From: Convolutriloba macropyga | Taxonomy: Eukaryota | Assembly (NCBI RefSeq): GCF_964194025.1 | Contig: NC_134479.1 | Location: 38,936,001-39,000,000 of the forward strand | Reading direction: 5' to 3' | DNA length: 64,000 nucleotides | Part shown: piece by piece, positions 1,296-64,000 of the stretch | Numbering within the stretch: position 1 is the first letter of the stretch | How the letters are laid out: each line of letters opens with the position of its first letter | Made by a program: the position numbers and the translations under genes | Notes under the pieces: model-generated | Database searches by the model: none | The model's input: the letters and a program-made list of their open reading frames with translations, nothing else | What the model was told of the DNA's origin: nothing

Positions 1296-1429
1296 TGAAG
1301 TAAAATCAGCATAATGAGTGTTAATGTTGAAGATTTCTTTTATAGAAGAGAATCATTCAATTGAGTGACAATGATGAAATTTATACCTACCAAAAAAGAA
1401 ATCGGCTTATTTCATGCTTTTGTATTTAG

Positions 1430-23274: not shown

Positions 23275-23608
23275 GTTAATATAACTGGACAGAAAAGAAG
23301 TGTCCTGAAAGGATAGGATTTGCCTTAAAATTTCTGATCATAAATAGGATCGTGAAATTGTACCTTTTAATGTTGAACACTTTGTAGTACTGTGATTAAT
23401 TGCTCTCGAACAAAGTTCGTAGCAATTATTGTAAACGTGTTGGTCTTTTTTATGCAAAATTTTTTGCTTGACCGTTTTTGCGTTTTTCTAGAACATTCTT
23501 AAGTGTCTTTTTCACGCTTTCGTTCATTTTTGAGTGATTTCTTTTGTTCTCACTCCGAAGTAAAGCTTGTTGCTAAAATAAAAACGATTGCAGCATTGCA
23601 ACAAGAAG

Positions 23609-23690
23609 GGACCGATAGCCTAGTGGGCAGTGCTTCTGGTGAGGGATCGGGAGGTGCATGGTTCGAATCCCGGTGTGGTGAACTCTTTTT
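23609..23690 (+). mobile_element. tRNA-derived SINE head or pseudo-tRNA (Pol III A and B boxes)
   Basis: A box TAGCCTAGTGG 23616-23626, B box GGTTCGAATCC 23660-23670, TTTTT at 23686-23690. Acceptor and T stems pair poorly. Confidence 0.6.
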
Positions 23691-24289
23691 GTGACCATAA
23701 AGAAAAATTCATCTAGACTAGAGCACCTGAATTAAATTTACTTTTCTTCCTCGCAAACGGGATGAAGAGCTGTTAGGGATTTAAGTTCTCTTAGGATCTG
23801 AAGTTCTCTTAAGAGTGATTTAATTAATTCTCTTAGAAATTTACGCTTTACCAGTCTCTATGAATGTGATTCACCAAAACTGTTTTGAAGAGACAATTTT
23901 ATGGTGTGAAGGGAGGTTCTTAATCTTAATCTTAAAAGTTTGACCCTCAGTCGAACCTCCACCTGGGGATTTGGACAGACCTCTCGTCCAGACCTCCCAA
24001 CCCCCGCCCCTACCCCCATTAATACTAGCATGGCTAAACCCCAGCTGGGTACTAGCAACCGATCGCCAGTCGTTTGAGAGCAATTCGCCTGTTGTTAGTC
24101 GGTTATGTTTAATGGTTGTGATTACAACGCTGGGTATTGGGGTTTTAACCTCTTCGTTGTCAAAACTTTTTGTATCTAAAATTTTTCTCAATGATACACC
24201 CCTTTGAATTAAAGTTTTTAACGTGACCGCGATAACTTTTTTCCATTTCAGATTTGTTTCTATCTCTATGCTACTGCAATCAAATCCTA

Positions 24290-25250
24290 TTTGCAGCTAT
24301 TCCGGCAGTCTGCGGGCTATTTTTTTCCAATAACCGCACAGCGATGGCTGGGGCTATTATTGGTCTTCTCTTGGTTTTTATTTCGTCATCAGGTTTTTTG
24401 TTACGACCATATTACGTCACATCCACTTGGAATCTGCTTTTTGTTCATTCATTAATGCAATTTCAACTGAAGTGCGTGCTTGACGTTTTTGTTCACTTAG
24501 TGGAGCGAATTTTTTTGTTTATTTGCGTGGTTAGGTTTTTGGTCACACGTGACTTTACCTCACTCTCAAAAATGACTTCCTCATCTTGAAATTGACTTTT
24601 ATTTAATTTAATTGAAGGGGATAAGGTCAAATGGGTGTGTGTCACTCTAAATGCAGGTTATTTGAGAGCAGCTAATAGACCCAGAAATAACTTATACAGA
24701 TTCTTAATCAAATTGTAACATCTCATCCTCTAATGAAAAGAGGAAGTTTTTTGATATTTGTTTTAATGTTTTTTAAGACGTTCTTTAGATCTACGAAGCT
24801 ATTTAGGCTATTTTTAGCAATCTGCCAGCTGTGTTTTTTCTACTTTGGCGGATAAAAATGTGTTGCGCTTTACCGTAAGTCACAACTTGTTCATTATTTT
24901 GCATGAAATCGTTTTGACTCTAGGCTGGTTTTGTTCTTTGCTTCTTCTGATCAAAGTGCTTCCGATTAAAGTGCAAAGCAATATAAATTGAACGGAGTCA
25001 TAAAAACCAAATCAGGAGTAGAAACGCGATGCAGCCCAGTTTTAGATGTCTTCTACTTGATTTTTTCTAATGCTTAATGGTATTAGTGCTCACCCCATTT
25101 AGCCCCTCATAGTGTGTCAAACTAGAATATCCAATCAAAATAGCGCGCGCATAATAATTTTTAATACGAAAACTAATTTCAATTTTGTCTGTTCTTCCAA
25201 TCCCAATTGGTGGTGTGGGAATCAATTACGGCTATTTTCCGCTTATGTTT
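24290..25250 (+). repeat. Modular repeat cluster after the PNO1 exon (modules A-C-E-D)
   Basis: 24328-24840 aligns with 20193-20528 and 21114-21545. 24865-25230 aligns with 850-1260. Confidence 0.8.
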
Positions 25251-26029
25251 TGCTATCGAAACCCTGAGCAAGTCTATTTCGCTTTTGGCTTTTTATGTGG
25301 CATAGTTTACTTGCTCCGTTGTTTTTTTTTATCTTGAGTAAGTGTTTAATCTTAGCTTGGTGCATCTTTCTGTTTATTCGCTCGAGGTCTTTTTGGTTAC
25401 ATTTCCTTATGGTGGTCTACTCTTTCGTATGATTACTGATTAGTTTTTTATCGATTGGATAATTAAAGTTGGCTGAATTTTTTGGAGTAGTTTTACATTT
25501 TAGTGACTAACTCCGGTTTTTTTCACCAGATATTTCTGTCCTTGAACATATTTTTGTATCCGTAATGTTGAGAAAAACGTTATGTTCTACTATTTCTGTA
25601 TAATCACTGAATTTTTATCTGTTGATTATGTTTCTTTTGCCAATTAAGTTTTCACCTGAAGAATGGATCAATCAAGGTGTCAATTTTATGGCGCAAACTT
25701 GCAGCTTTTTTTGTGGATAATGTGTTTCATATTTTGATTTTATTGTTTCAGTTTGAGTGAATTATATATAATAATAAAGTTGAATATTGTTAGCTGGCTT
25801 TTTAAATTGAATCATATCTCTGAACTGGTGTTGTACACTATCTTAATAAATATGTTCTAGATTGTTCTGGTTTTCGTTTCTAGTAACATTCCGATTCTGA
25901 ACATCTTTTGGGTGATAATTAATTTCTCAATGATTTATTTTATTACGGATTAAGGAATCATGGTATTAATTTTCGCTGAATTTATTTTTCTTGCTATTGA
26001 AACTTCGCGCTTGAAGTATTGACTCAATA

Positions 26030-29000
26030 CTCTTGAACCATTGTGCTGTAGTTTGATAAATGTTCTTTGTCACCTTAGTTTTTGCTTGTTTTCAACTGGC
26101 GTTGCAATTTATCAAACAACTTAAGTTGACAGTTGGAGAATTTCTCTGCTGTGTTTCAAATCTTTATCTTTGTATTTGGGCACAGTTTTAAAATAAGTTT
26201 TATGAACTCCACTGGTTAATGAATTTCCTCAGTTGTTATTTTGGGTTAAACGTTGATGTTATGCCACTGAGATGAGTTGCTGATTTTTATTACTATCTGA
26301 CTATAGATTGATCAAAACGACAGAATCTCCTCTACGTCAATAAATGGTATTTTGACCCATTTTCTATTATTTTGGACTGCTGACCCAAATGATGTTTTGC
26401 CGTCTTTCGTATCATCACTGATTGCTCATCTGATACATTGATAATTTTTGTCTTTGCTAGCTGGCTTTCTAGAAATTGAATCATTTTTGTGAAATAGTTT
26501 TGAATACTATCTCAATAGATTTTTTTTCTTGTTTGTTCTGGGTTTTTTTTCTAGTTTTATGATTAACATCTTTCGGGTATGAATGCATGATATTCAGTTT
26601 TTGCTGAATTCTTTTTTACTATTGAGTTTTCGCACTTGAGGTTTTGACTCAATAGTTTTGAATCATTGTGCTGTAGTGTGATAAATGTTCCTTGTCACCT
26701 TAGTTTTTGCTCGTTTTCAAATGGCGTTGCAATTTATCAAACTAATTAAGTTGACAGTTGGAGAATTTCTCTGCTGTGTTTCAAATCTTTATCTTTGTAT
26801 TTGGGCACAGTTTTAAAATAAGTTTTATGAACTCCACTGGTTTATGAATTTGCTCAGTTGTTTTTTTGGTTAAACGTTTTTTTGGTTAAACGTTGATGTT
26901 ATCCCACTGAGATGAGTTGCTGATTTTTATTACTATCTGACTATAGATTGATGAAAACGACTGAATCCCCTCTCCGTCAATAATTGGTATTTTGCCCCAT
27001 TTTCTATTTTTTTGGACTGCTGACCCAAATGATGTTTTGACGTCTTTTGTATCATCACTGGTTGCTCATCTGATTCATTGATAATTTTTGTCTTTGCTAG
27101 CCGGCTTTCTAGAAATGGAATCATTTTTGTGAAATTGTTTTGAAAACTATCGCAATAGATTTTTTTTCTAGTTTGTTCTGGGTTCTATTTCTAGTTTTGT
27201 GATTTAACATCTTTCGGGTATGAATGAATGATATTAAGTTTTTGCTGAATTTTTTTACTTTTGAATTTTTGCCATTGAGGTTTTGACTTAATAATCGTTG
27301 ACTTCAGGTTTTGACTCAATACTTTTGAATCATTGTGCTGTAGTGTGATAAATGTTCCTTGTCACCTTAGTTTTTGCTCGTTTTCAAATGGCGTTGCAAT
27401 TTATCAAACTAATTAAGTTGACAGTTGGAGAATTTCTCTGCTGTGTTTCAAATCTTTATCTTTGTATTTGGGCACAGTTTTAAAATAAGTTTTATGAACT
27501 CCACTGGTTAATGAATTTCCTCAGTTGTTATTTTGGGTTAAACGTTGGTTATCCCACTGAGGTGAGTTGCCGATTTTTATTACTATCTGAGTACGGATTG
27601 ATGAAAAACGACTGAATCCCCTCTCCGTCAATAATTGGTATTTTGCCCCATTTTCTATTTTTTTGGACTGCTGACCCAAATGATGTTTTGACGTCTTTTG
27701 TATCATCACTGGTTGCTCATCTGATACATTGATAATTTTTGTCTTTGCTAGCCGGCTTTCTAGAAATGGAATCATTTTTGTGAAATTGTTTTGAAAACTA
27801 TCGCAATAGATTTTTTTTTCTAGTTTGTTCTGGGTTCTATTTCTAGTTTTGTGATTTAACATCTTTCGGGTATGAATGAATGATATTAAGTTTTTGCTGA
27901 ATTTTTTTACTTTTGAATTTTTGCCATTGAGGTTTTGACTTAATAATCGTTGACTTCAGGTTTTGACTCAATACTTTTGAATCATTGTGCTGTAGTGTGA
28001 TAAATGTTCCTTGTCACCTTAGTTTTTGCTCGTTTTCAAATGGCGTTGCAATTTATCAAACTAATTAAGTTGACAGTTGGAGAATTTCTCTGCTGTTTCA
28101 AATCTTTATCTTTGTTTTTTTTGCACAGTTTTAAAATAAGTTTTATGAACTCCACTGGTTTATGAATTTCCTCAGTTGTTATTTTCGGTTAAACGTTGGT
28201 TATCCCACTGAGGTGAGTTGCCGATTTTTATTACTATGTGACTATAGATTGATGAAAACGACTGAATACCCTCTCCGTCAATAATTGGTATTTTGCCCCA
28301 TTTTCTATTTTTTTGGACTGCTGACCCAAATGATGTTTTGCCGTCTTTCGTATCTTCACTGATTGCTCATCTGATACATTGATAATTTTTGTCTTTGCTA
28401 GCTGGCTTTCTAGACATTGAATCATTTTTGTGAAATAGTTTTTGTGAAATTTTTACCTCAATATATTTTCTAGTTTGTTTGGGTTCTATTTGTAGTTTTA
28501 TGATGTAACATCTTTCGGGTATGATTGAATGATATTAAGTGTTTGCTGATTTTTTTTACTTTTGAATTTTTGCCATTGAGGTTTTGACTTAATAATCGTT
28601 GACTCAATAATCGTTGACTTCAGGTTTTGACTCAATACTTTTGAATCATTGTGCTGTAGTGTGATAAATGTTCCTTGTCACCTTAGTTTTTGCTCGTTTT
28701 CAAATGGCGTTGCAATTTATCAAACTAATTAAGTTGACAGTTGGAGAATTTCTCTGCTGTGTTTCAAATCTTTATCTTTGTATTTGGGCACAGTTTTAAA
28801 ATAAATTTTATGAACTCCACTGGTTAATGAATTTCCTCAGTTGTTATTTTGGGTTAAACGTTGGTTATCCCACTGAGGTGAGTTGCCGATTTTTATTACT
28901 ATCTGAGTACGGATTGATGAAAAACGACTGAATCTCCTCTCCGTCAGTAATTGGTATTTTGCCCCATTTTCTTTTATTTTGGACTGCTGACCCAAATGTT

Positions 29001-29350
29001 TTGCCGTCTTTCGTATCATCACTGATTGCTCATCTGATACATTGATAATTTTTGTCTTTGCTAGCTGGCTTTCTAGAAATTGAATCTTTTTTGTGAAATA
29101 GTTTTTGTGAATTACTACCTCAATAAATTTTCTAGTTTGTTTGGGTTCTATTTGTAGTTTTATGATGTAACATCTTTCGGGTATGATTGCATGATTTTAA
29201 GTTTTTGCGGAATTCTTCTTTTACTATTTAATTTGCGCACTTGATGTTTTGACTAATAATCGTTGACTCAATAATCGTTGACTTGAGGTTTTAACTCAAT
29301 ACTTTTGAATCATTGTGCTGTAGTGTGATAAATATTCCTTGTCACCTTAA
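26030..29350 (+). repeat. Satellite subfamily with ~660 bp period
   Basis: AATCATTGTGCTGTAGTGTGATAAAT at 26661, 27328, 27980, 28644 and 29308. Confidence 0.9.
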
Positions 29351-32300
29351 TTTTTTGCTCGAATACGTTTTTGTACTGAATTCAATTTTTGGCTTTTGAG
29401 TCTTCGAAGGTGAAGTATGCACTTCATAATCGTTTGTCTTCGTTGTAGCTGTACTGTTTTAATTATTCGCCTGAAGTCCTCTGCTGTGCTTTTGGGCTTC
29501 GGTTTTTGAGATTGCTCGGGAGTTGCTTTGAAATACATTGTAATGTTATCCCATTGATACAACCAACTGATTTCTTTTCTTAGCTGAAAGTAATCCCTCC
29601 TATTGTTTTCTTCTTCACATTGTACATGACAGATTTATTGTTCTGCTAGCGCCAGTGTCGCAACTGTTTTTCCTTATGACTTTGTTGGCGTTGCAAATTA
29701 TTCATCAATCAAATCATTTTTTGTTGCTTTATCTTTGTATCCTCGGATTATCCTCTGACATTAATTGGCAATTTGTCTCATTTTCTCTGATATCGGACTG
29801 CTGACTCAAGTGATGTTTTACCATCTTTCGTATGATCATTGATTAATTTCTTATCTGAAACATTGATAGTTTATGTCTTCGCTAGCTGGCTCTTTAAGCT
29901 AAGCTTTGAAAAGTATTGAATACTATCAATAATTGTTATCTGGATTCTGTTTCTAGTTTATGTTGTAACATCTTTCGGGTATGAATGCATGATATTAGTT
30001 TTTTGCTGAATTCTTTTTTTGGCTAATGGGTCTTCGCACATGAAGTATTGACTGAACAGTCGTTAATCTTCATGGTAGCTGCTATTCTTATGACTCACCT
30101 GACGTTCTAAGCTTTGCGTCTGGGGTTTTGCTTGGAAGATGCCCTGAATTACATTCTGATTTTATCCCACTCATGCGACCAACTGGTTCTTTTATTTAGC
30201 CCAAAGTTATCTTTTTATTTTTTCTGCTCCACATAGTAGAAAGAATTATTGTTCTGCTATCGCTAGTCTCGCAACTGTTTTTCCCCTGTGACCTTGCTTG
30301 CGTTCCAAATAATCATCAATCTAATCAGTATGCCTTTTGGAGAATTTCGCTGCTTCTCAGATCTATATCTTTGTAAAATTTATGGGTTCTACTGTTTTGT
30401 GGGTTTGCTCAGTTGTTTTTTTTTGTTGTGTTCAAGTTTGATTTTATCCCACTGATGTGACTTCCTGTTTTTGGGTTTCGGTTTTTGAGTTTGCTTAGAC
30501 GTTGCTCTGAATCACATTCTAGTTTTTTCCCACTGATGCGACCAACTACTATCTGACTTTATTTTGAATGTTATTTGATTTTCGAGTATAACGACTGAAT
30601 CTCTTCTCCGTCATTAGTTGGGACTTTTTCCCATTTTCTCTATAGGTCTACTGACTCAAATTATGTTTTACCACTTTTCGTATGATTACTAATTAATTTC
30701 GTTCGGATACACTGATTGCTTGTCTTCGTAAGCTGGCTTTTTAAGATGAATCTTTTTGATCTGGATTCCGTTTCTAGTTCATTAATAGTTCATCATTCAT
30801 CTTTCGGGTATGAATGCAGAACATTAATTTTCTACTGAATACCTTTTTTGGCTTTTGAGTTTTCGAAGGTGAATGACGCACTTAATAATCGTTTTTCTTC
30901 GTCGTAGCTGTACTATTCTAATGATTCGCCTGAAGTCCACTGCTGTGGTTTTAGGCTTCGGTTTTTGAGTTTGCTCGGGAGTTGCTTTGAAATACATTGT
31001 GATGTTATCCCATTCATATAACCAACTCATTTACTTAGCTAAAAAATAATCCCACCTATTTTTGGCTGCATCATAGAGTATCTGACAGAGTTGTTGTTCT
31101 GTCATCGCTAGTGTCTCAACTTATTTTCCTGGGGACCTTGTTGAGATCTTTCAACTGGTTTGCAAATAATCATCAATCTAATTGGTTTGCGTTTTGGAGA
31201 ATTCGCTGCTTTTCAAATCTTAATCTTTTTAGTTTTTATGAGTTTTACTGGTTTAAGTGTTTGCTCAGTTGTATTTTGTTGTTGGGTCAACGGTTATCCC
31301 ACTGATATGATTTCTTGATTTTTTACTATCTGACTATATTGTGATTGTTGTTTGATTTTCTCATATAGCAACTGAATCTTCTCCGTCATTAATTGGTGTT
31401 TCTTCTCATTTCCTCTATCTGACTGCGGCCTCAAATGATGTTTTACCATTTTTCGTTTAATTACTAAAAAATTTTTTTCTGATTCACTGATTGCTTGTCT
31501 TCGTAAGCTAGCTTTTTAAGCTGAATCTTTTTGAAATAGTATTGAATACTATCTCTAAGAATTTTTTTGATCTGGATTCCGTTTCTAGATCATTATCTAA
31601 TATCTTTCGGGTATGAATGCAGAATTTTAATTTTCTACTGAATACATTTTTTGGCTTTGGAGTCGTCGAAGGTGAAGTACGCACTTAATAATCGTTTGTC
31701 TTCGTGGTAGCTGTGCTGTTTTCGCCTGAAGTCATCTGCTGTCTCTGCTGTGCTTTTGGGCTTCTGTTTTTGAGTTTGCTCTGGAGTTGCTTTGAAATAC
31801 ATTGTGATGTTATCCGATCCATACAACCAACTCATTTTCTGAGCTACAAATAATCCCACCTATTTTTTTCTGCATCATATAATATCTGACAGAGTTATTG
31901 TTCTGTCATCGCTAGTGTCTCAACTTATTTTCCTGGTGATCTTGTTGAGATCTTTTTCAACTGGGTTGCGAATTAATCATCAATCTAATTGGTTTGCGTT
32001 TTGGAGAACTTCACTGCTTTTCAAATCTTTATCTTTTTAATTTATGAGTTTTTACTGGTTTATGTGTTTGCTCAGTTGTATTTTTTCATTGGTTCAAGGG
32101 TTATCCCACTATGAATTCTTTTTTTACTATCTGACTATATTCTGATTTTTGTTTGAGTTTCTCATATAGCAACTGAATATGTTCGTCATTAATTGGTGTT
32201 TCTTCCCATTTCCTCTATCGGACTGCTGCCTCAAATGATGTTTAACCGTATGATCTTTGATTAATTTCTTATCTGATACATTGATAGTTTCTGTCTTCGC

Positions 32301-35300
32301 TAGCTCGCTCTTTAAGCTAAACCTTTGTTAAAAAGTATTGAATACCATCTTTATTTTTTTCTGGATTCCGTTTCTAGTTTATGATGTCACATCTTTCGGT
32401 TATGAATGCATGATATTAGTTTTTTTGTTGAATTTCTTTTTTGGCTATTTTGTCTTTGCACATGAAGTATTGACTGAATAGTCGTTAATCTTCATGGTAG
32501 TTGCTATTCTTATGACCCTCCTGACGTTTTAAGCCTTCCGTTTGGAGTTTTTGCTCGGAATTTCTTTGAATTACATTCTGATTTTATCCCACTGATGTGA
32601 CAAACTGATTCTTTTATTTAGCTAAAAGTAATCTTTTTTCTGCTGCACATAGTATCTGAAAGAATTATTCTGCTATCGCTAGTCTCGCAACTGTTTTTCC
32701 CCTGTGACCTTGCTTGCGTTCCAAATAATCATCAATCTAATCAGTATGCCTTTTGGAGAATTTCGCTGCTTCTCAGATCTATATCTTTGTAAAATTTATG
32801 GGTTCTACTGTTTTGTGGGTTTGCTCAGTTGTATTTTTTGTTGTGTTCAAGTTTGATTTTATCCCACTGATGTGACTTCCTGTTTTTTGGTTTCTGTTTT
32901 TGAGTTTGCTTAGACGTTGCTCTGAATCACATTCTGGTTTTTTTCCCGCTGATGCGACCAACTACTAACTGACGTTATTTTGATTGTTATTTGATTTCCT
33001 CGTATAACCACCTCGTATGAATCTCCTGTCATTAGTTTGTATTCTTCCCGTTTTCTCTATCGGACTGCTGACTCAAATGATTTTTTAACATCTTTCGTAG
33101 GATTACTAATTGATCTCTTTTCTGATACACTGATTGCTTGTCTTCCTAAGCTGGCCCTTTAAGTTGAATCTTTTTGAAATAGTATTGAATACTATCTCAA
33201 GGATTTTTTTGATCTGGATTCCGTTTCTATTTCATTATGTAACGTCTTTCGGGTAGGAGTGCAGAATATTAATTTTCTACTGAATACGTTTTGGCTTTTG
33301 AGTCGTCGAAGGTGAAGTACGCACTTAATAATCGTTTGTCTTCTTTGGAGATGTACTGTTTTAATGATTCGCTTGAAGTCCTCTGCTCTGCTTTTGGGCT
33401 TCGGTTTTTGAGTTTTCTCGGGAGTTTCTTTGAAACACATTGTGATGTTATCCCATTGATGCAACCAACTGATTTTTTTTCTTAAATTAAAATAATCCTA
33501 CCTGTTTTTTGCCTCACAGTATCTGACAGAGTTATTGTTCTGTCATCGCTAGTGTCTCAACTTCTTTTCCTGGTGAGCTTGTTGAGATCATTTTCAACTG
33601 GGTTGCAAATTAATCATCAATCTAATTGGTTTGCCTTTTGGAGAAATTCGCTGGTTTGCAAATCTTTGTCTTTTTAATTTTACTGGTTTATGTGTTTGCT
33701 CAGTTGTATTTTTTCATTGGTTCAATGGTTATCCCACTATGAATTCTTTTTTTTACTATCTGACTATATTCTGATTTTTGTTTGAGTTTCTCATATAGCA
33801 ACTGAATATGTTCGTCATTAATTGGTGTTTTTCCCATTTACTATATTCCCTATGATCATTGATTAATTTCTTATCTGATACATTGATAGTTTCTGTCTTC
33901 GGAAGCTGGCTTCTTAAGCAGAATCTGTGAAATAGAATTGAATTCTTTTTCAATAATTTTTTATCGGTATTCCGTTTCTAGTTTCTGATGTGACATCTGT
34001 CGGTAATGAATGCCTATCGTTTTTTACTGAATTCATTTTTCTGGCTATTGTGTCGTCGCACGTGAAGTATTCACTTAATAATTGTATACCTTCGTGTCTG
34101 TGCTGTTTTTATTCGCCTGAAGTTCTCTGTTCTTCTTTTGGACCTCTGCTTTTGAGTTTGCTCGGGAGTTGCTTTTAAATATATTTTATGTTACGCAATT
34201 GATGCGACCAACTAATTTTTTTAGCTAAAAATAATCCTTACTTTTTTTCTTGCTTCACATATTATCTGGCAGAATTATTGTTCTGCTATTGCTAGCATCG
34301 CAACTGTGTTTTTCTAGTGATCTTGTTGGCGATATAAATTAATCATCGATCTAATCGATTTGACTTTTGGCTTTTCAAATCATTATCTGCTTAATTGTTA
34401 TGAGTTTTGCTGTTTGAATTTTACTTCGGTTTGTTTTTTTGTTCAACTTTGGTGTTATCCCACTGATATGACTTCCTGATTTTTATTACTATCGGACTAT
34501 ACTTTGATTGTTGTTTGATTTTCTCGTTTAACGACTGAATCCTTTCACCATCATTAGTTGGTATTTTTCCCATTTTTTCGGTCTGCTGACTCAAATCATG
34601 TTTTACCATCTTTCGTATGATCACTGATTAATTTCTTATCTGATACATTAATAGTTTCGTCTTCGGAAGTTGCTTTTTTAAGCTGAATCTTTGTGAAATA
34701 GTGTTGAATACTATCTGAATGATTTTTTGTTCTGGAAGCCATTTCTAGTTTATGATAAAACATCTTTCGGGTATGAATGCTTGATATTATTTTCTTACTG
34801 AATAAATTTTTTCTGGCTTGTGGGTAGTCGCACTTGAAGTATTCACTTAAAAATCGTTTATCTTCGTGGTAGCTGTGCTGGTTTTATGATTGGCCTAAGT
34901 TCTCTGCTGTGCTTTTGGGCTTCTGTTCTTCAGTTTGCTTGGGATTTGCTTTGAAATACATTGTAATGTTATCCAATTGACGCGAGCAATTGGTTTATGA
35001 TTTTGACCAGTTGTATGTTTTGTTTTTTCAACTTTGTTGTTATCCCACTGATATGACTTCTTGATTGTTTTTACTATCTGTGTATATTCTGATTGTTGTT
35101 TGATTTTCTCGTATAGCAACTGAATCTCCTCTCCGTCATTAATTGGTGCTGTTCCCATTTCCTCTATCGGACTGCTGCCTCAAATGATGTTTTAGCATCT
35201 TTCGTATGATTACTAATTAATTTCTTTCTGATACACTGATTGCTTGTCTTCGTAAGCTGGCTTTTTAAGATGAATCTTTTTGATCTGGATTCCGTTTCTA

Positions 35301-49900: not shown

Positions 49901-50039
49901 AATTGACGCGACCAAATAATTTTTTCTTAGCTAAAGATAATCTTTCCCTTTTTTCCTGCTGCACATAATATCTGGCAGAATTATTGTTCTGCTATCGCTA
50001 GTATCGCAACTGTGTTTACCTGGTGATCCTGGCAAGGTA

Positions 50040-52850: not shown

Positions 52851-55579
52851 TTGCTCAGTTGTGTTTTTTTGTTGGTTCAACTTTGATTTTATCCCACTGA
52901 TATGACTTCCTTTTTTTTATTACTCTCTGATTATATTTTGATTGTTGTTTGATTTTCTCGTATAATGACTGAATCTCGTCAGTCCTTAGTTGATATTTTA
53001 CCCATTTTCTCGGTCTGCTGAATCAAATGATGTTTTACCATCTTTCGCATGATCACTGATTAATTTCTTAACTGATACATAGATAGTTTCGTCTTCAGAA
53101 GCTGGCTTTTTAAGGTGAATCTTTGTGAAATAGTATTGAATACTATTGCTTTGGTTTTTTTGTTCTGGATATCGTTTCTAGTTTATGATGTAACATCTTT
53201 CGGGTATGAATGCATGATACTATTTTTTTACTGAAGTAATTTGTTCTGGCTATTGAGTCGTCGCACGTTAAGTATTCAGTTGATAATCGTTTGCCTTCGT
53301 TGTAGCTCTGCTGGTTTTATTATTCGCCTAAGTTCTCTGCTGTGCGTTTGGGCCTCTGTTTTTCAGTTTGCTCGGGAGTTGCTTTGAACTACATTGTGAT
53401 GTTATGCAATTGACGCGACTATCTGGTTTATGATTTTGACCAGTTGTATGTTTTGTTGTTTCAACTTTGATGTTATCCCACTGATATGACTTCTTGATTT
53501 TTATTACTATCTGACTATATTCTGATTGTTGTTTAATTTTCTCGTATAATGACTGAATCTCGTCAGTCTTTAATTGATATTTTACCCATTTTCTCGGTCT
53601 GCTGAATCAAATGATGTTTTACCATCTTTCGTATGATCACTGAATAATTTCTTAACTGATACATAGATAGTTTCGTCTTCAGAAGCTGGCTTTTTAAGGT
53701 GAATCTTTGTGAAATATTATTGAATACTATTGCTTTGGTTTTTTTGTTCTGGATATCGTTTCTATTTTATGATGTAACATCTTTCGGGTATGAATGCATG
53801 ATACTATTTTTTAACTGAAATAATTTGTTCTGGCTATTGAGTCGTCGCACGTTAAGTATTCACTTGATAATCGTTTGTCTTCGTTGTAGCTCTGCTGGTT
53901 TTTTTATTCGCCTAAGTTCTCTGCTGTGCGTTTGGGCCTCTGTTTTTCAGTTTGCTCGGGAGTTGCTTTGAACTACATTGTAATGTTATCCAATTGACGC
54001 GACCAACTGGTTTATGAGTTTGCCCAGTTGTATTTTTTGTTGTTTCAACTTTGATGTTATCCCACTGATATGACTTCTTGACTTTTATTACTATCTGACT
54101 ATATTCTGATTGTTGCTTGATTTTCTCGTATAGCGACGGAATCTCTTCTCCTCCATTATTTGGTGTTTCTTCCCATTTTCTCTATCAGATTGCTGACTCA
54201 AATGATGTTTTACCATCTTTTGTATGATCACTGATTAATTTATTATCTGATACATAGATAGTTTCGTCTTCGGAAGTTGGCTTTTTAAGCTGAATCTTCG
54301 TGAAATAATATTGAATACTATTGCCTTGATTTTTTATCTGGATTTCGTTTGTAGTTTATGATGTAACATCTTTCGGGTATGAACGCTTGATACTAATTTT
54401 TTACTGAAATAATGTTTTCTGGCTATTGAGTCGTCGCAAGTGAAGTATTCACTTGATAATCGTTTGTCTTCGTGGTAGCGGTGATGATTTTATGATTCGC
54501 CTAAAATCTCTGCTGTGCTTTTGGGGCTCTGTTTTTCAGTTTGCTTGAGAGATGCTTTGAAATACATTGTAATGTTATCCATTTGACGCGACCAACAGGT
54601 TTATGAGTTTGCCCAGTTGTATTTTTTGTTGTTTCCTCAGTCTTGACTTTTTTTCCTCCGTCTGCTGAATCAAATGATGTTTTACCATCTTTCGTATGAT
54701 CACTGATTAATTTCTTAACTGATACATAGAGTTTCGTCTTCGGAAGTTGGATTTTTAAGCTGAATCTCTGTGAAATAATATAAAATACTTTCGCATTGAT
54801 TTTTTATCTGGATTTCGTTTCTAGTTTATGATGTAACATCTTCTGGGTATGAACGCACGATGCTAATTTTTTACTGAAATAATGTTTTCTGGCTATGGAG
54901 TCGTTGCATGAAGTATGCACTTAGTAATCGCTTATCTTCGTGGTAGCTCTGCTAGTTTTATGATTCGCCTAAGTTCTCTGCTCTGCGTTTGGGCCTCTGT
55001 TTTCAGTTTGTTTGCTCCGGAGATGCTTTGAAATACATTGTAATGTTATCCATTTGACGCGACCAACTGGTTTATGAATTTGCCTAGTTGTATTTTTTGT
55101 TGTTTCAACTATGATGACTTCCTGATTTTCATTAGTGTCTGACTATATTTTGATTGTTGTTTGATTTTCTCTTATAACGACTGAATCTCTTCACCGTCAT
55201 TAGTTGAATTTTTTTCCCTTTTCCTCCGTCTGCTGAATCAAATGATGTTTTGCCATCTTTCATATGATCAATGATTAATTTCCTAACTGATACATAGATA
55301 GCTTCGTCTTCGGAAGTTGACTTTTTAAGCTGAATCTTTGTGAAATTTTATTGAATACTATCGCCTTGATTTTTTTGTTCTGGATTTCGTTTCTAGTTGA
55401 TGATGTAACATCTTTCGGGTATGAATGCATGATACTATTTTTTTACTGAAATAATTTGTTCTGGCTATTGAGTCGTCGCACGTTAAGTATTAACTTGATA
55501 ATCGTTTGTCTTCGTTGTAGCTCTGCTGGTTTTATTATTCGCCTAAGTTCTCTGAGTCGTCGCAGAGAACTTAGTTGAC

Positions 55580-58500
55580 TTTTTAAGCTGAATCTTTGTG
55601 AAATTTTATTGAATACTATCGCCTTGATTTTTTTGTTCTGGATTTCGTTTCTAGTTGATGATGTAACATCTTTCGGGTATGAATGCATGATACTATTTTT
55701 TACTGAAATAATTTGTTCTGGCTATTGAGTCGTCGCACGTTAAGTATTAACTTGATAATCGTTTGTCTTCGTTGTAGCTCTGCTGGTTTTATTATTCGCC
55801 TAAGTTCTCTGCTGTGCGTTTGGGCCTCTGTTTTTCAGTTTGCTCGGGAGATTCTTTGAAATACATTGTTATGTTATCCATTTGACGCGACCAACTGGGT
55901 TATGAGTTTGCCCAGTTGTATTTTTTGTTGTTTCAACTTTGATGTTATCCCACTGATATGACTGCCTGATTTTGATTAGTGTCTGACTATATTTTGATTG
56001 TTGTTTGATTTTCTCTTATAACGACTGAATCTCTTCACCGTCATTAGTTGAATTTTTTCCCCTTTTCCTCCGTCTGCTGAATCAAATGATGTTTTACCAT
56101 CTTTCATATGATCAATGATTAATTTCTTAACTGATACATAGATAGCTTCGCCTTCGGAAGTTGACTTTTTAAGCTGAATCTTTGTGAAATATTATTGAAT
56201 ACTATCGCCTTGATTTTTTTGTTCTGGATTTCGTTTCTAGTTGATGATGTAACATCTTTCGGGTATAAATGCATGATACTATTTTTTTACTGAAATAATT
56301 TTTTCTGGCTATGGAGTCGTCGAACGTTAAGTATTCACTTGACATTAGTTTGTCTTCGTGGTAGCGGTGATGATTTTATGATTCGCCTAAAATCTCTGCT
56401 GTGCTTTTGGGGCTCTGTTTTTCAGTTTGCTTGAGATATGCTTTGAAATACATTGTAATGTTATCCATTTGACGCGACCAACTGGTTTATGAGTTTGCCC
56501 AGTTGTATTTTTTGTTGTTTCAACTATGATGTTATCCCACTCATATGACTTCCTGATTTTTATTAGGGTCTGACTATATTTTGATTGTTGTTTGATGTTT
56601 TCTTATAACGACTGAATCTCTTCACCGTCATTTGTTGATTTTTTCCCATTTCCTCCGTCTGCTGAATCAAATGATGTTTTACCATATTTCGTATGATCAC
56701 TGATTAATTTCTTAACTGATACATAGAGTTTCGTCTTCGGAAGTTGGCTTTTTAAGCTGAATCTTCGTGAAATAATATTGAATACTATTGCCTTGATTTT
56801 TTATCTGGATTTCGTTTGTAGTTTATGATGTAACATCTTTCGGGTATGAACGCATGATACTAATTTTTTACTGAAATAATGTTTTCTGGCTATTGAGTCG
56901 TCGCAAGTGAAGTATTCACTTGATAATCGTTTGTCTTCGTGGTAGCGGTGATGATTTTATGATTCGCCTAAAATCTCTGCTGTGCTTTTGGGGCTCTGTT
57001 TTTCAGTTTGCTTGAGAGATGCTTTGAAATACATTGTAATGTTATCCATTTGACGCGACCAACAGGTTTATGAGTTTGCCCAGTTGTATTTTTTGTTGTT
57101 TCCTCAGTCTTGACTTTTTTTCCTCCGTCTGCTGAATCAAATGATGTTTTACCATCTTTCGTATGATCACTGATTAATTTCTTAACTGATACATAGAGTT
57201 TCGTCTTCGGAAGTTGGCTTTTTTAAGCTGAATCTTCGTGAAATAATATTGAATACTATCGCCTTGATTTTTTATCTGGATTTCGTTTGTAGTTTATGAT
57301 GTAACATCTTTCGGGTATGAACGCATGATACTAATTTTTTACTGAAATAATGTTTTCTGGCTATTGAGTCGTCGCACGTTAAGTATTCACTTGATAATTG
57401 TTTGTCTTCGTCGTAGCTGTGATGATTATATGATTCGCCTAAAATCTCTGCTGTGCTTTTGGGCCTCTGTTTTTCAGTTTGCTCGGGAGATGCTTCGAAA
57501 TACATTGTAATGTTATCCATTTGACGGGACCAATTGGTTTATGAGTTTGCCCTGTTGTGTTTTTTGTTTCAATTATGATATTTTCCCACTGATATGACTT
57601 CCTGATTTTTGTTAGTGTCTGACTATATTTTGATTGTTGTTTGATTTTCTCTTATAACGACTGAATCCCTTCACCGTCATTAGTTGACATTTTTCCCATT
57701 TCCTGCGTCTGCTGAATCGAATGATGTTTTACCATCTTTCGTATGATCACTGATTATTTTCTCATCTGAAATATAAATAGTTTCCTCTTTGGAAGTTGGC
57801 TTTTTAAGCTGAATCTTTGTGAAATAGTATTGAATACTATTGCCTTGATTTTTTTGTTCTGGATTTCATTTCTAGTTGATGATGTAACATCTTTTGGGGT
57901 ATGAATGCTTGATACTAGTTTTTTACTGAAATGATTTTTTCTGGCTATGGAGTCGTCGCACGTGAAGTATTCACTTGATAATTGTTTGTCTTCGTGGTAG
58001 CTGTGATGATTTTACGATTCGCCTAAAATCTCTGCTGTGCTTTTGGGGCTCTGTTTTTCAGTTTGCTTGAGATATGCTTTGAAATACATTGTAATGTTAT
58101 CCATTTGACGCGACCAACAGGTTTATGAGTTTGCCCAGTTGTATTTTTTGTTGTTTCCTCAGTCTTGACTTTTTTTCCTCCGTCTGCTGAATCAAATGAT
58201 GTTTTACCATCTTTCGTATGATCACTGATTAATTTCTTAACTGATACATAGAGTTTCGTCTTCGGAAGTTGGCTTTTTAAGCTGAATCTTCGTGAAATTT
58301 TATTGAATACTATCGCCTTGATTTTTTTGTTCTGGATTTCGTTTCTAGTTGATGATGTAACATCTTTCGGGTATGAATGCATGATACTATTTTTTACTGA
58401 AATAATTTGTTCTGGCTATTGAGTCGTCGCACGTTAAGTATTAACTTGATAATCGTTTGTCTTCGTTGTAGCTCTGCTGGTTTTATTATTCGCCTAAGTT

Positions 58501-60160
58501 CTCTGCTGTGCGTTTGGGCCTCTGTTTTTCAGTTTGCTCGGGAGATTCTTTGAAATACATTGTTATGTTATCCATTTGACGCGACCAACTGGGTTATGAG
58601 TTTGCCCAGTTGTATTTTTTGTTGTTTCAACTTTGATGTTATCCCACTGATATGACTGCCTGATTTTGATTAGTGTCTGACTATATTTTGATTGTTGTTT
58701 GATTTTCTCTTATAACGACTGAATCTCTTCACCGTCATTAGTTGAATTTTTTCCCCTTTTCCTCCGTCTGCTGAATCAAATGATGTTTTACCATCTTTCA
58801 TATGATCAATGATTAATTTCTTAACTGATACATAGATAGCTTCGCCTTCGGAAGTTGACTTTTTAAGCTGAATCTTTGTGAAATATTATTGAATACTATC
58901 GCCTTGATTTTTTTGTTCTGGATTTCGTTTCTAGTTGATGATGTAACATCTTTCGGGTATAAATGCATGATACTATTTTTTTACTGAAATAATTTTTTCT
59001 GGCTATGGAGTCGTCGAACGTTAAGTATTCACTTGACATTAGTTTGTCTTCGTGGTAGCGGTGATGATTTTATGATTCGCCTAAAATCTCTGCTGTGCTT
59101 TTGGGGCTCTGTTTTTCAGTTTGCTTGAGAGATGCTTTGAAATACATTGTAATGTTATCCATTTGACGCGACCAACAGGTTTATGAGTTTGCCCAGTTGT
59201 ATTTTTTGTTGTTTCCTCAGTCTTGACTTTTTTTCCTCCGTCTGCTGAATCAAATGATGTTTTACCATCTTTCGTATGATCACTGATTAATTTCTTAACT
59301 GATACATAGAGTTTCGTCTTCGGAAGTTGGCTTTTTTAAGCTGAATCTTCGTGAAATAATATTGAATACTATCGCCTTGATTTTTTATCTGGATTTCGTT
59401 TGTAGTTTATGATGTAACATCTTTCGGGTATGAACGCATGATACTAATTTTTTACTGAAATAATGTTTTCTGGCTATTGAGTCGTCGCACGTTAAGTATT
59501 CACTTGATAATTGTTTGTCTTCGTCGTAGCTGTGATGATTATATGATTCGCCTAAAATCTCTGCTGTGCTTTTGGGCCTCTGTTTTTCAGTTTGCTCGGG
59601 AGATGCTTCGAAATACATTGTAATGTTATCCATTTGACGGGACCAATTGGTTTATGAGTTTGCCCTGTTGTGTTTTTTGTTTCAATTATGATATTTTCCC
59701 ACTGATATGACTTCCTGATTTTTGTTAGTGTCTGACTATATTTTGATTGTTGTTTGATTTTCTCTTATAACGACTGAATCCCTTCACCGTCATTAGTTGA
59801 CATTTTTCCCATTTCCTGCGTCTGCTGAATCGAATGATGTTTTACCATCTTTCGTATGATCACTGATTATTTTCTCATCTGAAATATAAATAGTTTCCTC
59901 TTTGGAAGTTGGCTTTTTAAGCTGAATCTTTGTGAAATAGTATTGAATACTATTGCCTTGATTTTTTTGTTCTGGATTTCATTTCTAGTTGATGATGTAA
60001 CATCTTTTGGGGTATGAATGCTTGATACTAGTTTTTTACTGAAATGATTTTTTCTGGCTATGGAGTCGTCGCACGTGAAGTATTCACTTGATAATTGTTT
60101 GTCTTCGTGGTAGCTGTGATGATTTTACGATTCGCCTAAAATCTCTGCTGTGCTTTTGGG
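55580..60160 (+). repeat. Mosaic higher-order block that includes a 2113-bp duplication
   Basis: Identical ORFs at 57272/59385. Deletion junction TCCTCAGTCTTGAC at 54634, 57101, 58156 and 59214. Confidence 0.8.
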
Positions 60161-63100
60161 CCTCTGTTTTTCAGTTTGCTTGTGAGATGCTTCAATTTAC
60201 ATTGTAATGTTATCCATTTGACGGGAACAATTGGTTTATGAGTGTGCCCTGTTGTTTTTTGTTGTTTCAACTATGATGTTATCCCACTGATATGACTTCC
60301 TGATTTTTATTAGTGTCTGACTAAATTTTGATTGTTGTTTGATTTTCTCTTATGACGACTGAATCTCTTCACCGTCATTAGTTGAAATTTTTCCCATTTC
60401 CTCCGTCTGCTGAAGCAAATGATGTCTTACCATCTTTCGTGTGATCACTGATTAATTTCTTAACTGATACATAGATAGTTTCGTCTTCGGAAGTTGGCTT
60501 TTAAAGCAGAATCTTTGTGAAATAGTATTGAATACTATCGCCCTGATTTTTTTCTGGATTTCGTTTCTAGTTGATGATGTAACATCTTTTGGGTATGAAT
60601 GAATGATACTTTTTTTACTGAAATAATTTTAGCTGTGCTGATTTTACGATTTGCCTAAAATCTCTACTGTGCTTTTGGGCCTCTGTTTTTCAGTTTGCTC
60701 GGGAGATGCTTTGAAATACATTGTAATGTTATCCATTTGACGCGACGAACTGGTTTATGAGTTTGCCCAGTTGAATTTTTTGTTGTTTCAACTATGATGT
60801 TATCCCACTGATATGACTTCCCGATTTTTATTAGTGTCTGACTATATTTTGATTGTTGTTTGATTTTCTCTTATAACGACTGAATCTCTCCACCGTCAAT
60901 AGTAGAAATTTTTTCCCATTTCCTCCGTCTGCTGAATCAAATGATGTTTTATCATCTTTCGTATGATCACTGATTAATTTCTTAACTGATACATAGATAG
61001 TTTCGTCTTCGGAAGTTGGCTTTTTAAGCTGAATTTTTGTAAAGTATTATTGAATACTATCGCCTTGATTTTTTTGTTCTGGATTTCGTTTCCAATTGAT
61101 GATGTAACATCTTTTGGGTATGAATGCATGATACTATTTTTTTTACTGAAATAATTTTTTCTGGCTGTGGAGTTGTCGCAAGTGAAGTTTTCACTTGATA
61201 ATCGTTTGTCTTCGTGGTAGCTGTTCTGATTTTATGATTCGCCTAAAATCTCTGCTGTGTTTTCGGGCCTCTGTTTTTCAGTTTGCTCGGGAGATGCTTT
61301 GAATTACATTGTAATGTTATCCATTTGACGCGACCAACTGGTTTATGAGTTTGCCCAGTTGTATTTTTTGTTGTTTCAACTATGATGTTATCCCAGTGAT
61401 ATGACTTCCTGATTTTTATTAGTGTCTGACTATATTTTGATTGTTGTTTGATTTTCTCTTATAACGACTGAATCTCTTCACCGTCATTAGTTGATGTTTT
61501 TCCCATTTCCTCCGCCTGCTGAATCGAATGATGTTTTACCATCTTTCGTATGATCACTGATTATTTTCTTATCTGATATATAGAGAGTTTCGTCTTCGGA
61601 AGTTGGCTTTTTAAGCTGAATCTTTGTGAAATAGTATTGAATACTATCGCCTTGGTTTTTTTGTTCTGGGTTTCGTTTCTAGTTGATGATGTAACATCTT
61701 TCGGGTATGAATGCATGATACTAGTTTTTTACTGAAATAATTTTTTCTGGCTATGGAGTCGTCGCAAGTGAAGTATTCGCTTCGTGGTAGCTGTGCTTGT
61801 TTTATGATTCGCCTAAGTTCCCTGCTGTGCTTTTGGGCTTCTGTTCTTCAGTTTGCTTGGGAGTTGTTTTGAAATACATTGTGATGTTATCCAATTGACG
61901 CGACTAACTTGTTTATGATTTTGCCCAGTTGTATTTTTTGTTGTTTAAACTTTGAGGTCATCCCACTGATATGACTTCTTGATTTTTATTACTATCTGAC
62001 TATGTTCTGATTGTTGTTTGATTTTCTCTTATAACGACTGAATCTCTTCACCGTCATTAATTGGTTTTTTTTCCTATTTCCTGCGTCTGCTGAATCGAAT
62101 GATGTTTTACCATCTTTCGTATGATCACTGATTATTTTCTCATCTGATATATAGATAGTTTCGTCTTCGGAAGTTGGATTTTTAAGCTGAATCTTTGTGA
62201 AATAGTATTGAATACTATCGCCTTGATTTTTTTATCTGGATTTTGTTTCTAGTTGATGATGTAACATCTTTCGGGTATGAATGCATGATACTAGTTTTTT
62301 ACTGAAATAATTTTTTCTGGCTATGGAGTCGTCGCAAGTGAAGTATTCGCTTCGTGGTAGCTGTGCTGGTTTTATGATTCGCCTAAGTTCCCTGCTGTGC
62401 TTTTGGGCTTCTGTTCTTCAGTTTGCTTGGGAGTTGTTTTGAAATACATTGTGATGTTATCCAATTGACGCGACTAACTTGTTTATGATTTTGCCCAGTT
62501 GTATTTTTTTTTGTTTAAACTTTGATGTTATCCCACTGATATGACTTCTTGATTTTTATTACTATCTGACTATGTTCTGATTGTTGTTTGATTTTCTCTT
62601 ATAACGACTGAATCTCTTCACCGTCATTAGTTAATTTTTTTTCCTATTTCCTGCGTCTGCTGAATCGAATGATGTTTTACCATCTTTCGTATGATCACTG
62701 ATTATTTTCTCATCTGATATATAGATAGTTTCGTCTTCGGAAGTTGGCCTTTTAAGCTGAATCTTTGTGAAATAGTATTGAATACTATCGCCTTGATTTT
62801 TTTGTTCTGGATTTCGTTTCTAGTTGATGATGTAACTTCTTTCGGGTATGAATGCATGATACTAGTTTTTTACTGAAATAATTTTTTCTGGCTATGGAGT
62901 CGTCGCAAGTGAAGTATTCGCTTGATAATCATTTGTCTTCGTGGTAGCTGTGCTGGTTTTATGATTCGCCTAAGTTCCCTGCTGTGCTTTTGGGCTTCTG
63001 TTCTTCAGTTTGCTTGGGAGTTGTTTTGAAATACATTGTGATGTTATCCAATTGACGCGACTAACTTGTTTATGATTTTGCCCAGTTGTATTTTTTGTTG

Positions 63101-64000
63101 TTTAAACTTTGATGTTATCCCACTGATATGACTTCTTGATTTTTATTACTATCTGACTATGTTCTGATTGTTGTTTGATTTTCTCTTATAACGACTGAAT
63201 CTCTTCACCTTCATTAGTTGATTTTTTTCCTATTTCCTGCGTCTGCTGAATCGAATGATGTTTTACCATCTTTCGTATGATCACAGATTATTTTCTTATC
63301 TGATATATAAATAGTTTCGTCTTTGGAAGTTAGCTTTTTAAGCTGAATCTTTGTGAAATAGTATTGAATACTATCGCCTTGATTTTTTTGTTCTAGATTT
63401 CGTCTCTAGTTGATGATGTAACATCTTTCGGGTCTGAATGCATGATACTAGTTTTTTACTGAATTAATATTTTCTGGCTATTGAGTCGTTGCATGAAGTA
63501 TGCACTTAGTAATCGCTTATCTTCGTGGTAGCTCTGCTAGTTTTATGATTCGCCTAAGTTCTGTGCTCTGCGTTTGGGCCTCTGTTTTCAGTTTGCTCGG
63601 GAGTTGCTTTGAACTACATTGTAATGTTATCCAATTGACGCGACCAACTGGTTTATGGGGTTGCCCAGTTGTATTTTTTGTTGTTTCAACTATGACCTTA
63701 TCCCAATGATATGACTTCTTGATTTTTATTACTATCTGACTATGTTGTGTATGTTCTGATTGTTGTTTGATTTTCTCTTATAACGACTGAATCTCTTCAC
63801 CGTCATTAGTTGATTTTTTTTCCTATTTCCTGCGTCTGCTGAATTGAATGATGTTTTACCATCTTTCAAATGATCACTGATTATTTTCTCATCTGATATA
63901 TAGATAGTTTCGTCTTCGGAAGTTGGGTTTTTAAGCTGAATCTTTGTGAAATAGTATTGAATACTATCGCCTTGATTTTTTTGTTCTGGATTTTGTTTCT

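What the first reader, a model, noticed from the sequence alone, without database searches (positions are those of the whole stretch)
23275..64000. Giant satellite-filled intron (>40 kb) in a ribosome-biogenesis gene
Seen: the PNO1-like exon ends at a donor at 23275. I found no continuation exon (YTPLKENW-like) before the window ends, and ~38.6 kb of the interval is tandem satellite. The other complete introns here are 78-2155 bp. Known: satellite giant introns are described for Drosophila Y-linked fertility genes (kl-3, kl-5) and need dedicated processing. Inference: an essential housekeeping gene is transcribed through a satellite array, possibly with recursive splicing.
Basis: partly seen in the sequence, partly recalled or inferred. 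Interest (0 to 1): 0.7.

Follow-up and report, generated by a model that had tools for sequence, protein, structure and literature searches.

The report
Satellite-filled 85-kb intron in PNO1
In the acoel worm Convolutriloba macropyga, the only copy of the essential ribosome-assembly gene PNO1 has its first exon 85 kb from the rest of the gene. Ninety-three percent of that gap is one 584-bp tandem repeat matched nowhere else in the genome. This is a clear case of a known oddity, but no RNA data could be reached to confirm splicing.

Summary
The window is C. macropyga scaffold C12:38,936,001-39,000,000.

- **Gene model.** A start exon (window 23117-23274, donor GT at 23275) ends in phase 2. Exons 2 and 3 of PNO1 lie on the same strand at C12:39,044,546-39,045,294, about 45 kb past the window end. 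Exon 2 opens with G + YTPLKQQW, exactly in phase.
- **Copy number.** All three exons are single-copy in the 1.18-Gb assembly.
- **Intron 1.** It is 85,271 bp. Of this, 79.1 kb (93%) is about 135 head-to-tail ~584-bp units, all in gene orientation. The array is T-rich, non-coding and gap-free, and it matched only this locus.
- **Exon 1 assignment.** The exon-1 tail (ETRTLRVPSNR) is the best match to the PNO1 pre-YTPLK motif among 2,851 candidate phase-2 donors upstream of exon 2.
- **Not supported.** Recursive splicing: no ratchet sites were found.
- **Not testable.** Transcription and splicing.

Earlier notes of this scan report similar satellite-filled introns in this genome (USP32, 92 kb, and others). 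This is therefore one more member of a recurrent feature of the genome.

The parts
23117..23274 (+). PNO1 coding exon 1: 52 codons plus 2 bases (phase 2). If the TTTTCAG acceptor at 23126-23132 receives the spliced leader, the mRNA starts at 23133 and the start codon is ATG 23150.
   Evidence: translation ends ...ETRTLRVPSN+AG. (single copy in the genome). (PNO1 motif score 10.9 bits, best of 2,851 + strand candidates).
23126..23132 (+). Probable spliced-leader acceptor (TTTTCAG|A) inside the annotated exon 1. The first AUG after it (23150) is in frame.
   Evidence: Sequence. The leader published for a sister acoel (PMC9911081) occurs exactly in this genome. Inference; no RNA evidence.
23275..23280 (+). 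Intron 1 donor GTTAAT (non-consensus, like the GTTCGC donor of intron 2).
23275..26207 (+). Non-array 5' part of intron 1 (2.9 kb). It holds dispersed repeats, including a tRNA-like SINE at about 23560-23720.
   Evidence: at least 1,802 first-look candidates genome-wide.
26208..41419 (+). 5' diverged part of the array. Units are 620-970 bp with inserted or deleted segments and are 69-86% identical to central units. It includes three near-identical 1,529-bp higher-order copies at about 35.7-40.3 kb.
41420..60629 (+). Regular ~590-bp units (subfamily A, 41.4-49.9 kb), followed by mixed units with about 1,056/2,113-bp higher-order periods.
60630..64000 (+). Start of the homogeneous ~584-bp core (subfamily C). 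It runs on past the window to about C12:39,039,776, and the array ends at about C12:39,041,310.

Best explanation
This is the single PNO1 gene of Convolutriloba macropyga. It has three coding exons: exon 1 at window 23117-23274, exon 2 at C12:39,044,546-39,044,690 and exon 3 at C12:39,044,932-39,045,294. Intron 1 is 85,271 bp, and 79.1 kb of it is one head-to-tail array of about 135 units of ~584 bp. The array most likely grew in place by tandem duplication and unequal exchange: its edges are old and diverged and its core is homogenised. Inferred mechanism: RNA polymerase II reads from exon 1 through the whole array, and the exon-1 donor is cis-spliced to the exon-2 acceptor, so the array leaves as ordinary intron lariat. 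The array is tolerated because its sense strand is T-rich (44.5% T), carries very few AAUAAA/AUUAAA signals and has no consensus donors. It therefore defines neither pseudo-exons nor early 3' ends. The likely cost is only a transcription delay, about 20-45 min at textbook elongation rates. Shown: the anatomy, the reading phase, the single-copy status and the motif match. Inferred: transcription through the array and the splice itself.
For: Pfam KH_PNO1_2nd has one hit in the whole genome, on the same strand and downstream of the window (E 4e-40). Exon 3 scores 145.6 bits against a cut-off of 27 and is 69-77% identical to animal PNO1 proteins, and 91% to an unnamed best hit that is probably a relative. 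Exon 2 begins at TTTTACAG|G TAC ACT..., giving R-YTPLKQQW in phase with exon 1 (AG+G). Exon 2 has no in-frame ATG before YTPLKQQW, so an upstream coding exon is required. A position-specific score built from the 12 residues before YTPLK in 28 PNO1 homologues gives 10.9 bits for the exon ending at 23274. That is first of 2,851 + strand phase-2 GT sites (next -0.3) and above all 2,078 - strand controls (maximum 6.7). Each exon is single-copy. Array: 140 matches, all on the + strand, neighbour identity about 94.5%, falling with distance. Two searches found it only at this locus, while the same tool did find dispersed repeats. There are no N runs and no internal duplicate of 97% identity or more longer than 2.5 kb, so ~10-kb HiFi reads should place uniquely (assembly method in PMC13650328). 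Signals: AATAAA 8 on the sense strand against 115 antisense; GTAAGT 0.
Against: The exon-1 peptide has no homologue among 1.84 billion representative proteins and no Pfam hit. Its assignment therefore rests on about 12 residues, the phase and the position. The depletion of poly(A) signals is no stronger than base composition predicts. This animal uses spliced-leader trans-splicing, so the exon-2 acceptor could also take a leader.
Confidence: 0.75

Rival explanations
1. Exons 2 and 3 form an independent unit. A promoter or outron downstream of the array feeds the exon-2 acceptor, which receives the spliced leader. Exon 1 is then a stranded relic, or is used only rarely.
For: Acoels trans-splice about 30% of their genes (PMC9911081). 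The same 32-nt leader occurs exactly in this genome. The exon-2 acceptor has a good pyrimidine tract. An in-frame ATG (MKICTPIVEH...) follows YTPLKQQW.
Against: The leader has no AUG (sequence in PMC9911081, read). The first AUG in exon 2 is out of frame and overlaps the in-frame one (ATGGATG), so a leader-exon 2 mRNA would mostly start in the wrong frame. YTPLKQQW is conserved although it lies upstream of that ATG. In a full-length homologue (P0028) the first-KH match begins before the position equivalent to that ATG, so the ATG appears to lie inside the first KH-like domain. Exon 1 keeps a 66-codon open frame and the PNO1 motif.
Confidence: 0.1
2. Assembly artefact or haplotype-specific state. 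The array is misplaced, or its length is wrong, in this primary hifiasm assembly (heterozygosity 3.65%, ultra-low-input ~10-kb reads).
For: Contig N50 is only 0.19 Mb and the assembly has 6,645 gaps (PMC13650328). Long tandem arrays are error-prone to assemble.
Against: There are no N runs across the 124 kb read here. Matching in-phase PNO1 exons sit on both flanks in the same orientation, which a random misjoin would not give. The array has an ordered divergence gradient and no long near-identical blocks.
Confidence: 0.07
3. An unrecognised first exon lies closer to exon 2, in the array or in the 3.2 kb after it, and the exon at 23117-23274 belongs to another transcript.
For: PNO1 N-termini are poorly conserved, so a short exon could escape a motif scan.
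Against: No other phase-2 donor in the 108 kb upstream scores above -0.3 bits. No ORF in the proximal 3.3 kb resembles PNO1. A scan for an ATG-bearing open frame ending VP... at an AG|GT phase-2 donor found only the site at 23274.
Confidence: 0.05
4. The intron is removed stepwise by recursive splicing at sites inside the satellite units.
For: Recursive splicing is known for long Drosophila and vertebrate introns (general knowledge).
Against: Only three YAG|GTR sites occur in 85 kb, and none matches YAG|GTRAG. The consensus unit has no pyrimidine-tract acceptor and no GTRAG donor.
Confidence: 0.03

Closest known systems
Satellite-containing gigantic introns of the Drosophila Y-linked fertility genes kl-3 and kl-5, and of the autosomal genes Pzl, Myo81F and Mitf (PMC6508621, PMC11207136)
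   Same: A conserved protein-coding gene whose intron consists almost entirely of tandem repeat that must be transcribed to reach the next exon.
   Different: The fly introns are hundreds of kb to Mb of simple 5-10-bp satellites in heterochromatin, in testis-specific genes with dedicated factors. Here the intron is 85 kb, the repeat is a complex 584-bp locus-private unit, the gene is single-copy and housekeeping, and the neighbourhood is gene-dense. PMC11207136 treats 50-100-kb introns as large but not outliers.
Other intronic tandem arrays noted by this scan in the same genome (USP32 92-kb intron, s1-241008; a Helitron-ended 678-bp array, s1-237290; arrays in tolloid, PEDS1 and SQOR introns)
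   Same: Same genome, tens of kb of head-to-tail units several hundred bp long inside introns of conserved genes. The USP32 array is also reported as locus-private and about nine-tenths of its intron.
   Different: A different unit sequence and a different host gene. Those are AI notes that I did not re-test. For USP32 splicing was reported from RNA, which I could not obtain here. My array's junctions do not show Helitron ends.
Euchromatic satellite arrays and macrosatellites near or inside genes (Tribolium TCAST and other families, PMC5844308; human euchromatic alpha-satellite repeats, PMC7719264)
   Same: Tandem repeats lying in introns of active genes.
   Different: Those are short arrays or single units of genome-wide families. 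This is one 79-kb array of a private family.

Membership tests
PNO1/Dim2 (pre-40S ribosome assembly KH protein) | C-terminal type-I KH domain matching Pfam KH_PNO1_2nd above the curated cut-off | tested here: met
   145.6 bits against a cut-off of 27, covering the full model 1-90; the only hit in the genome.
PNO1/Dim2 (pre-40S ribosome assembly KH protein) | First KH-like region beginning with the conserved R-Y-T-P-L-K-x-x-W segment | tested here: met
   Exon 2 encodes YTPLKQQWMKICTPIVEHL.... Homologues read RYTPLKENWMKIFTPIVEHL. No Pfam model reached E<=1 on the 48-residue exon alone.
PNO1/Dim2 (pre-40S ribosome assembly KH protein) | Pre-motif E-x-R-K-[IV]-x-V-P-x-[HN]-R supplied by the upstream exon, in phase | tested here: met
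   Exon 1 ends QETRTLRVPSN+R. It scores 10.9 bits, first of 2,851 candidates. Some homologues carry the identical VPSNR (P0077, P0100).
Satellite DNA in the strict sense (abundant genome-wide tandem family) | Long head-to-tail non-coding array | tested here: met
   About 135 units, all on the + strand, over 79 kb. Longest open frames are 137-144 codons, and none was searched against protein databases. No Rfam or tRNA hit in the in-window part.
Satellite DNA in the strict sense (abundant genome-wide tandem family) | Present at many loci or making up a notable share of the genome | tested here: not met
   every scored match lies inside this one locus. 'Locus-private macrosatellite' is the better name. 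Caveat: the tool scores only the best candidates.
Drosophila-type gigantic satellite intron | Intron of hundreds of kb to Mb filled with satellite | tested here: not met
   The intron is 85,271 bp. The satellite fill is met at 93%; the size class is not.
Drosophila-type gigantic satellite intron | Sense-strand transcription through the array as one transcript, dependent on dedicated RNA-binding factors | not testable with these tools
Recursively spliced intron | Ratchet sites: a pyrimidine tract plus YAG directly followed by GTRAGT | tested here: not met
   no YAG|GTRAG in the intron, and only three weak YAG|GTR sites.
Helitron/Helentron-derived tandem array | Unit or array ends with 5'-TC and 3'-CTRR, with a nearby 3' hairpin, inserted between A and T | tested here: inconclusive
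   the array starts at about consensus position 53 and ends at about position 68. The flanks read ...TTATGA|ACTCC and ...TTTTAT|CTGAA, with no A|TC...CTRR|T pattern. Two 7-bp palindromes lie inside the unit, but not at the junction. This was read by eye only.

The most novel reading that the evidence does not exclude
In an animal that trans-splices a leader onto many mRNAs, an 85-kb array between donor and acceptor could set up a kinetic race at the exon-2 acceptor. One contender is the exon-1 donor, which has waited tens of minutes; the other is the spliced-leader particle. The leader product would open with an out-of-frame AUG and be unproductive. Array length, which changes quickly by unequal exchange, would then tune PNO1 dosage and so ribosome output. 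If many housekeeping genes here carry private arrays (USP32, PNO1 and others), this would be a genome-wide, fast-evolving dosage dial.
Probability: 0.07. Interest if true: 0.7.

Novelty: new member of a known kind. Interest (0 to 1): 0.42.

Why it matters
PNO1 is needed in every growing cell for the last steps of small-subunit ribosome maturation. Here its only copy can be expressed only by reading through 79 kb of tandem repeat. That shows large arrays need not be silenced, and need not be harmful, inside an essential and presumably constitutive gene. Together with the other intronic arrays noted in this genome, it makes C. macropyga a candidate system for studying how private satellites are born in introns, and how splicing copes with them in a species that also trans-splices. 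On its own it is one more example of a known phenomenon.

Tried and rejected
- **YTPLKENW pattern search.** A back-translated pattern gave nothing in the window and only a chance hit in the genome. The real exon reads YTPLKQQW; the Pfam search found it instead.
- **Exon-1 peptide.** A search of solved structures gave one chance-level hit (YopM, E 0.85). Pfam found nothing, and the 1.84-billion representative library found nothing. The N-terminus is too divergent, so I used a motif score.
- **Relatives' loci.** The contig of the best hit, P0001 (91% identical exon 3), could not be read.
- **Recursive splice sites.** None found.
- **RNA structure of a unit.** z = 0.08, no better than shuffled sequence.
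- **Rfam and tRNA scans of the in-window part of the array.** Nothing found.
- **Helitron origin.** The junctions do not fit.
- **Selection against poly(A) signals.** The counts match what base composition predicts.
Full report
**Where this is.** The window is G000:C12:38,936,001-39,000,000 on the + strand. The assembly has 1,175,981,408 bases in 4,694 scaffolds. That matches the published Convolutriloba macropyga assembly txConMacr16.3: 1,175.98 Mb, 4,694 scaffolds, ultra-low-input PacBio HiFi from ~10-kb fragments, hifiasm, contig N50 0.19 Mb, heterozygosity 3.65% (PMC13650328).

**The observation.**
- ATG 23117 opens a 53-codon frame, MAIFRR...ETRTLRVPSNR. It meets CAG|GTTAAT, so the exon ends at 23274 in phase 2 and the intron starts at 23275.
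- A TTTTCAG|A acceptor at 23126-23132 lies just after this ATG, and the next ATG (23150) is in frame. If the gene is leader-trans-spliced like its neighbours (earlier notes s1-240986 and s1-241010), the protein starts at 23150. This does not affect the finding.
- From 26,208 to the window end the sequence is tandem repeat. Repeated 20-mers cover 0.45-1.0 of each kb, all copies are direct, and there are no N runs.
- No YTPLKENW-like exon lies in the window.

**Finding the rest of the gene.**
- A whole-genome search with Pfam KH_PNO1_2nd gave one hit, at C12:39,045,010-39,045,279 on the + strand (E 3.8e-40).
- Exon 2 starts there at TTTTACAG|G TAC ACT CCT... It spans L003:1037-1181, which is C12:39,044,546-39,044,690, and ends at AAG|GTTCGC.
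- After a 241-bp intron, exon 3 runs to the stop codon. It spans L003:1423-1785, which is C12:39,044,932-39,045,294.
- The two bases left by exon 1 (AG) plus the first G of exon 2 give R. The junction therefore reads ...RVPSN-R-YTPLKQQWMKICTPIVEH...
- Lengths of 158 + 145 + 360 nt give 221 codons, or 210 from ATG 23150.
- The phase was checked by counting bases.

**Is exon 1 really PNO1?**
- Direct searches of the 53-residue peptide found no significant match: solved structures gave only a chance-level hit (E 0.85), Pfam nothing and 1.84 billion representative proteins nothing. This is expected for the poorly conserved N-terminus, but it means no outside protein confirms the join.
- Four sequence arguments support the assignment.
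  1. Exon 2 has no in-frame ATG before the conserved YTPLKQQW, so an upstream coding exon must exist.
  2. I took the 12 residues before YTPLK in 28 PNO1 homologues returned and read (typically xExRK[IV]xVPx[HN]R) and built a position score. I then scored every phase-2 GT site upstream of exon 2. The site at 23274 scores 10.9 bits. The next of 2,851 + strand sites scores -0.3, and the best of 2,078 - strand controls scores 6.7 (null mean -28.1, sd 7.3).
  3. A separate scan looked for an ATG-bearing open frame ending VP... at an AG|GT phase-2 donor. It found only this site in 108 kb.
  4. Exons 1, 2 and 3 are each single-copy in the genome. There is no second PNO1 and no orphan duplicate.
- Exon 3 is 69-77% identical to animal PNO1 proteins. 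It is 91% identical to the best hit, P0001, an unnamed ENA protein that is probably from a relative.

**The intron and its array.**
- Intron 1 is C12:38,959,275-39,044,545, or 85,271 bp.
- I fetched the next 60 kb. nhmmer with one unit found 140 matches, all on the + strand. The matches run from window-extended coordinate 26,208 to 105,248, and reading the sequence carries the last partial unit on to about 105,310. The array therefore spans C12:38,962,208-39,041,310, which is 79.1 kb or 93% of the intron.
- The 5' part (26.2-41.4 kb) has irregular, older units that are 69-86% identical to core units, with indels. It includes three near-identical 1,529-bp higher-order copies.
- From 41.4 kb the units are regular (about 590 bp, then about 584 bp). 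Neighbour identity is about 94.5%, lag-2 identity 95.4%, and identity decays with distance. Clustering at 10% distance puts 81 of 101 full units in one subfamily.
- The array begins at about consensus position 53 and ends at about position 68. This fits growth from a local tandem duplication.
- The array is 44.5% T on the gene's sense strand.
- It shows no sign of coding sequence or known RNA. The longest open frames are 137-144 codons and were not searched against protein databases. The in-window part has no Rfam or tRNA hit. A unit's RNA folds no better than shuffled sequence (z 0.08).
- Two genome searches, one with a core unit and one with edge units, returned matches only inside this locus. 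The same tool readily reports dispersed families: a SINE with 1,802 candidates and the spliced leader with 2,612 pattern matches. I therefore take 'locus-private' as real, with the caveat that only the best candidates are scored.

**Assembly.** The 124 kb I read holds no N. The array contains no internal duplicate of 97% identity or more longer than 2.5 kb, so ~10-kb HiFi reads should be placeable. In-phase PNO1 exons flank the array in the same orientation, which argues against a misjoin. The array length itself was not verified.

**Mechanism (inferred).**
- Transcription runs through the array, and the exon-1 donor is cis-spliced to the exon-2 acceptor.
- The sense strand has 8 AATAAA and 2 ATTAAA in 79 kb, against 115 and 31 on the antisense strand. 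It has no GTAAGT, and the consensus unit has neither a pyrimidine-tract acceptor nor a GTRAG donor. These counts are what the base composition predicts, so I claim orientation-dependent tolerance, not selection on the motifs.
- PNO1's own donors (GTTAAT and GTTCGC) are non-consensus, so counts of consensus donors are only a rough guide in this species.
- Recursive splicing is not supported: there is no YAG|GTRAG in the intron.
- For scale, the related acoel Symsagittifera roscoffensis has a mean intron length of 2.5 kb (PMC9911081).

**The main rival.**
- Acoels trans-splice about 30% of their genes (PMC9911081), and the published 32-nt leader occurs exactly in this genome.
- The exon-2 acceptor could therefore take a leader, which would make exon 1 dispensable.
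- Against this, the leader has no AUG, and the first AUG in exon 2 is out of frame and overlaps the in-frame one (ATGGATG). YTPLKQQW also stays conserved upstream of that ATG.
- I put this rival at about 0.1. It is also the basis of the 'novel case': array length tuning PNO1 output through a race between cis-splicing and trans-splicing.

**Context from the scan.** Earlier notes (AI notes that I did not re-test) report a 92-kb, nine-tenths-satellite, locus-private intron in USP32 of this same genome. They also report intronic arrays in a helicase gene, a tolloid-like gene, PEDS1 and SQOR. The PNO1 case is thus one member of a recurrent feature of this genome.

**Comparison with known systems.**
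- The closest published kind is the satellite-containing gigantic introns of Drosophila kl-3 and kl-5, and of three autosomal fly genes (PMC6508621, PMC11207136).
- It shares with them a conserved gene that must be read through satellite.
- It differs in scale (85 kb against Mb), repeat type (a complex private 584-bp unit against simple satellites), chromosomal setting and host-gene biology (a single-copy housekeeping gene against testis-specific genes).

**Verdict.** It is a new member of a known kind, of moderate interest.

Noticed in passing
window 23560-23720: A tRNA-like SINE sits in the non-array 5' part of intron 1. Copies 86-89% identical lie on many scaffolds, with 1,802 first-look candidates. 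ARAGORN does not call it a tRNA.
   Followed up: partly
whole genome (examples: loci L010-L012): The 32-nt spliced leader published for Symsagittifera roscoffensis occurs in this genome 2,612 times with up to 3 mismatches, many of them exact, against 0 for the reversed control. That seems far more than a spliced-leader RNA gene family would be expected to need. The leader may ride on a dispersed repeat or on retroposed mRNA 5' ends.
   Followed up: no
window 1-2000, 20000-21500, 24250-24600; also C12:39,043,000-39,044,300 and 39,046,000-39,052,000: One dispersed repeat recurs at least six times in 124 kb, always in + orientation. It often lies just upstream of or between genes, including right before PNO1 exon 2.
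   Followed up: no
L009, C12:39,053,705-39,060,000: A tandem duplication with a 3,840-bp period and 98.7% identity lies downstream of PNO1. It is unrelated to the 584-bp array.
   Followed up: no
window 23275-23280 and L003:1182-1187: Both PNO1 donors are non-consensus (GTTAAT and GTTCGC), in line with other notes of unusual splice sites in this genome (note s1-240955).
   Followed up: no
window 35674-40257: Three near-identical 1,529-bp higher-order copies (two variant units each) are embedded in the old, diverged 5' part of the array. This looks like a recent local amplification.
   Followed up: partly
window 22333-22827: The last exon of an unidentified + strand gene ends about 290 bp before the PNO1 start, so PNO1 exon 1 closes a tight same-strand gene cluster.
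   Followed up: no
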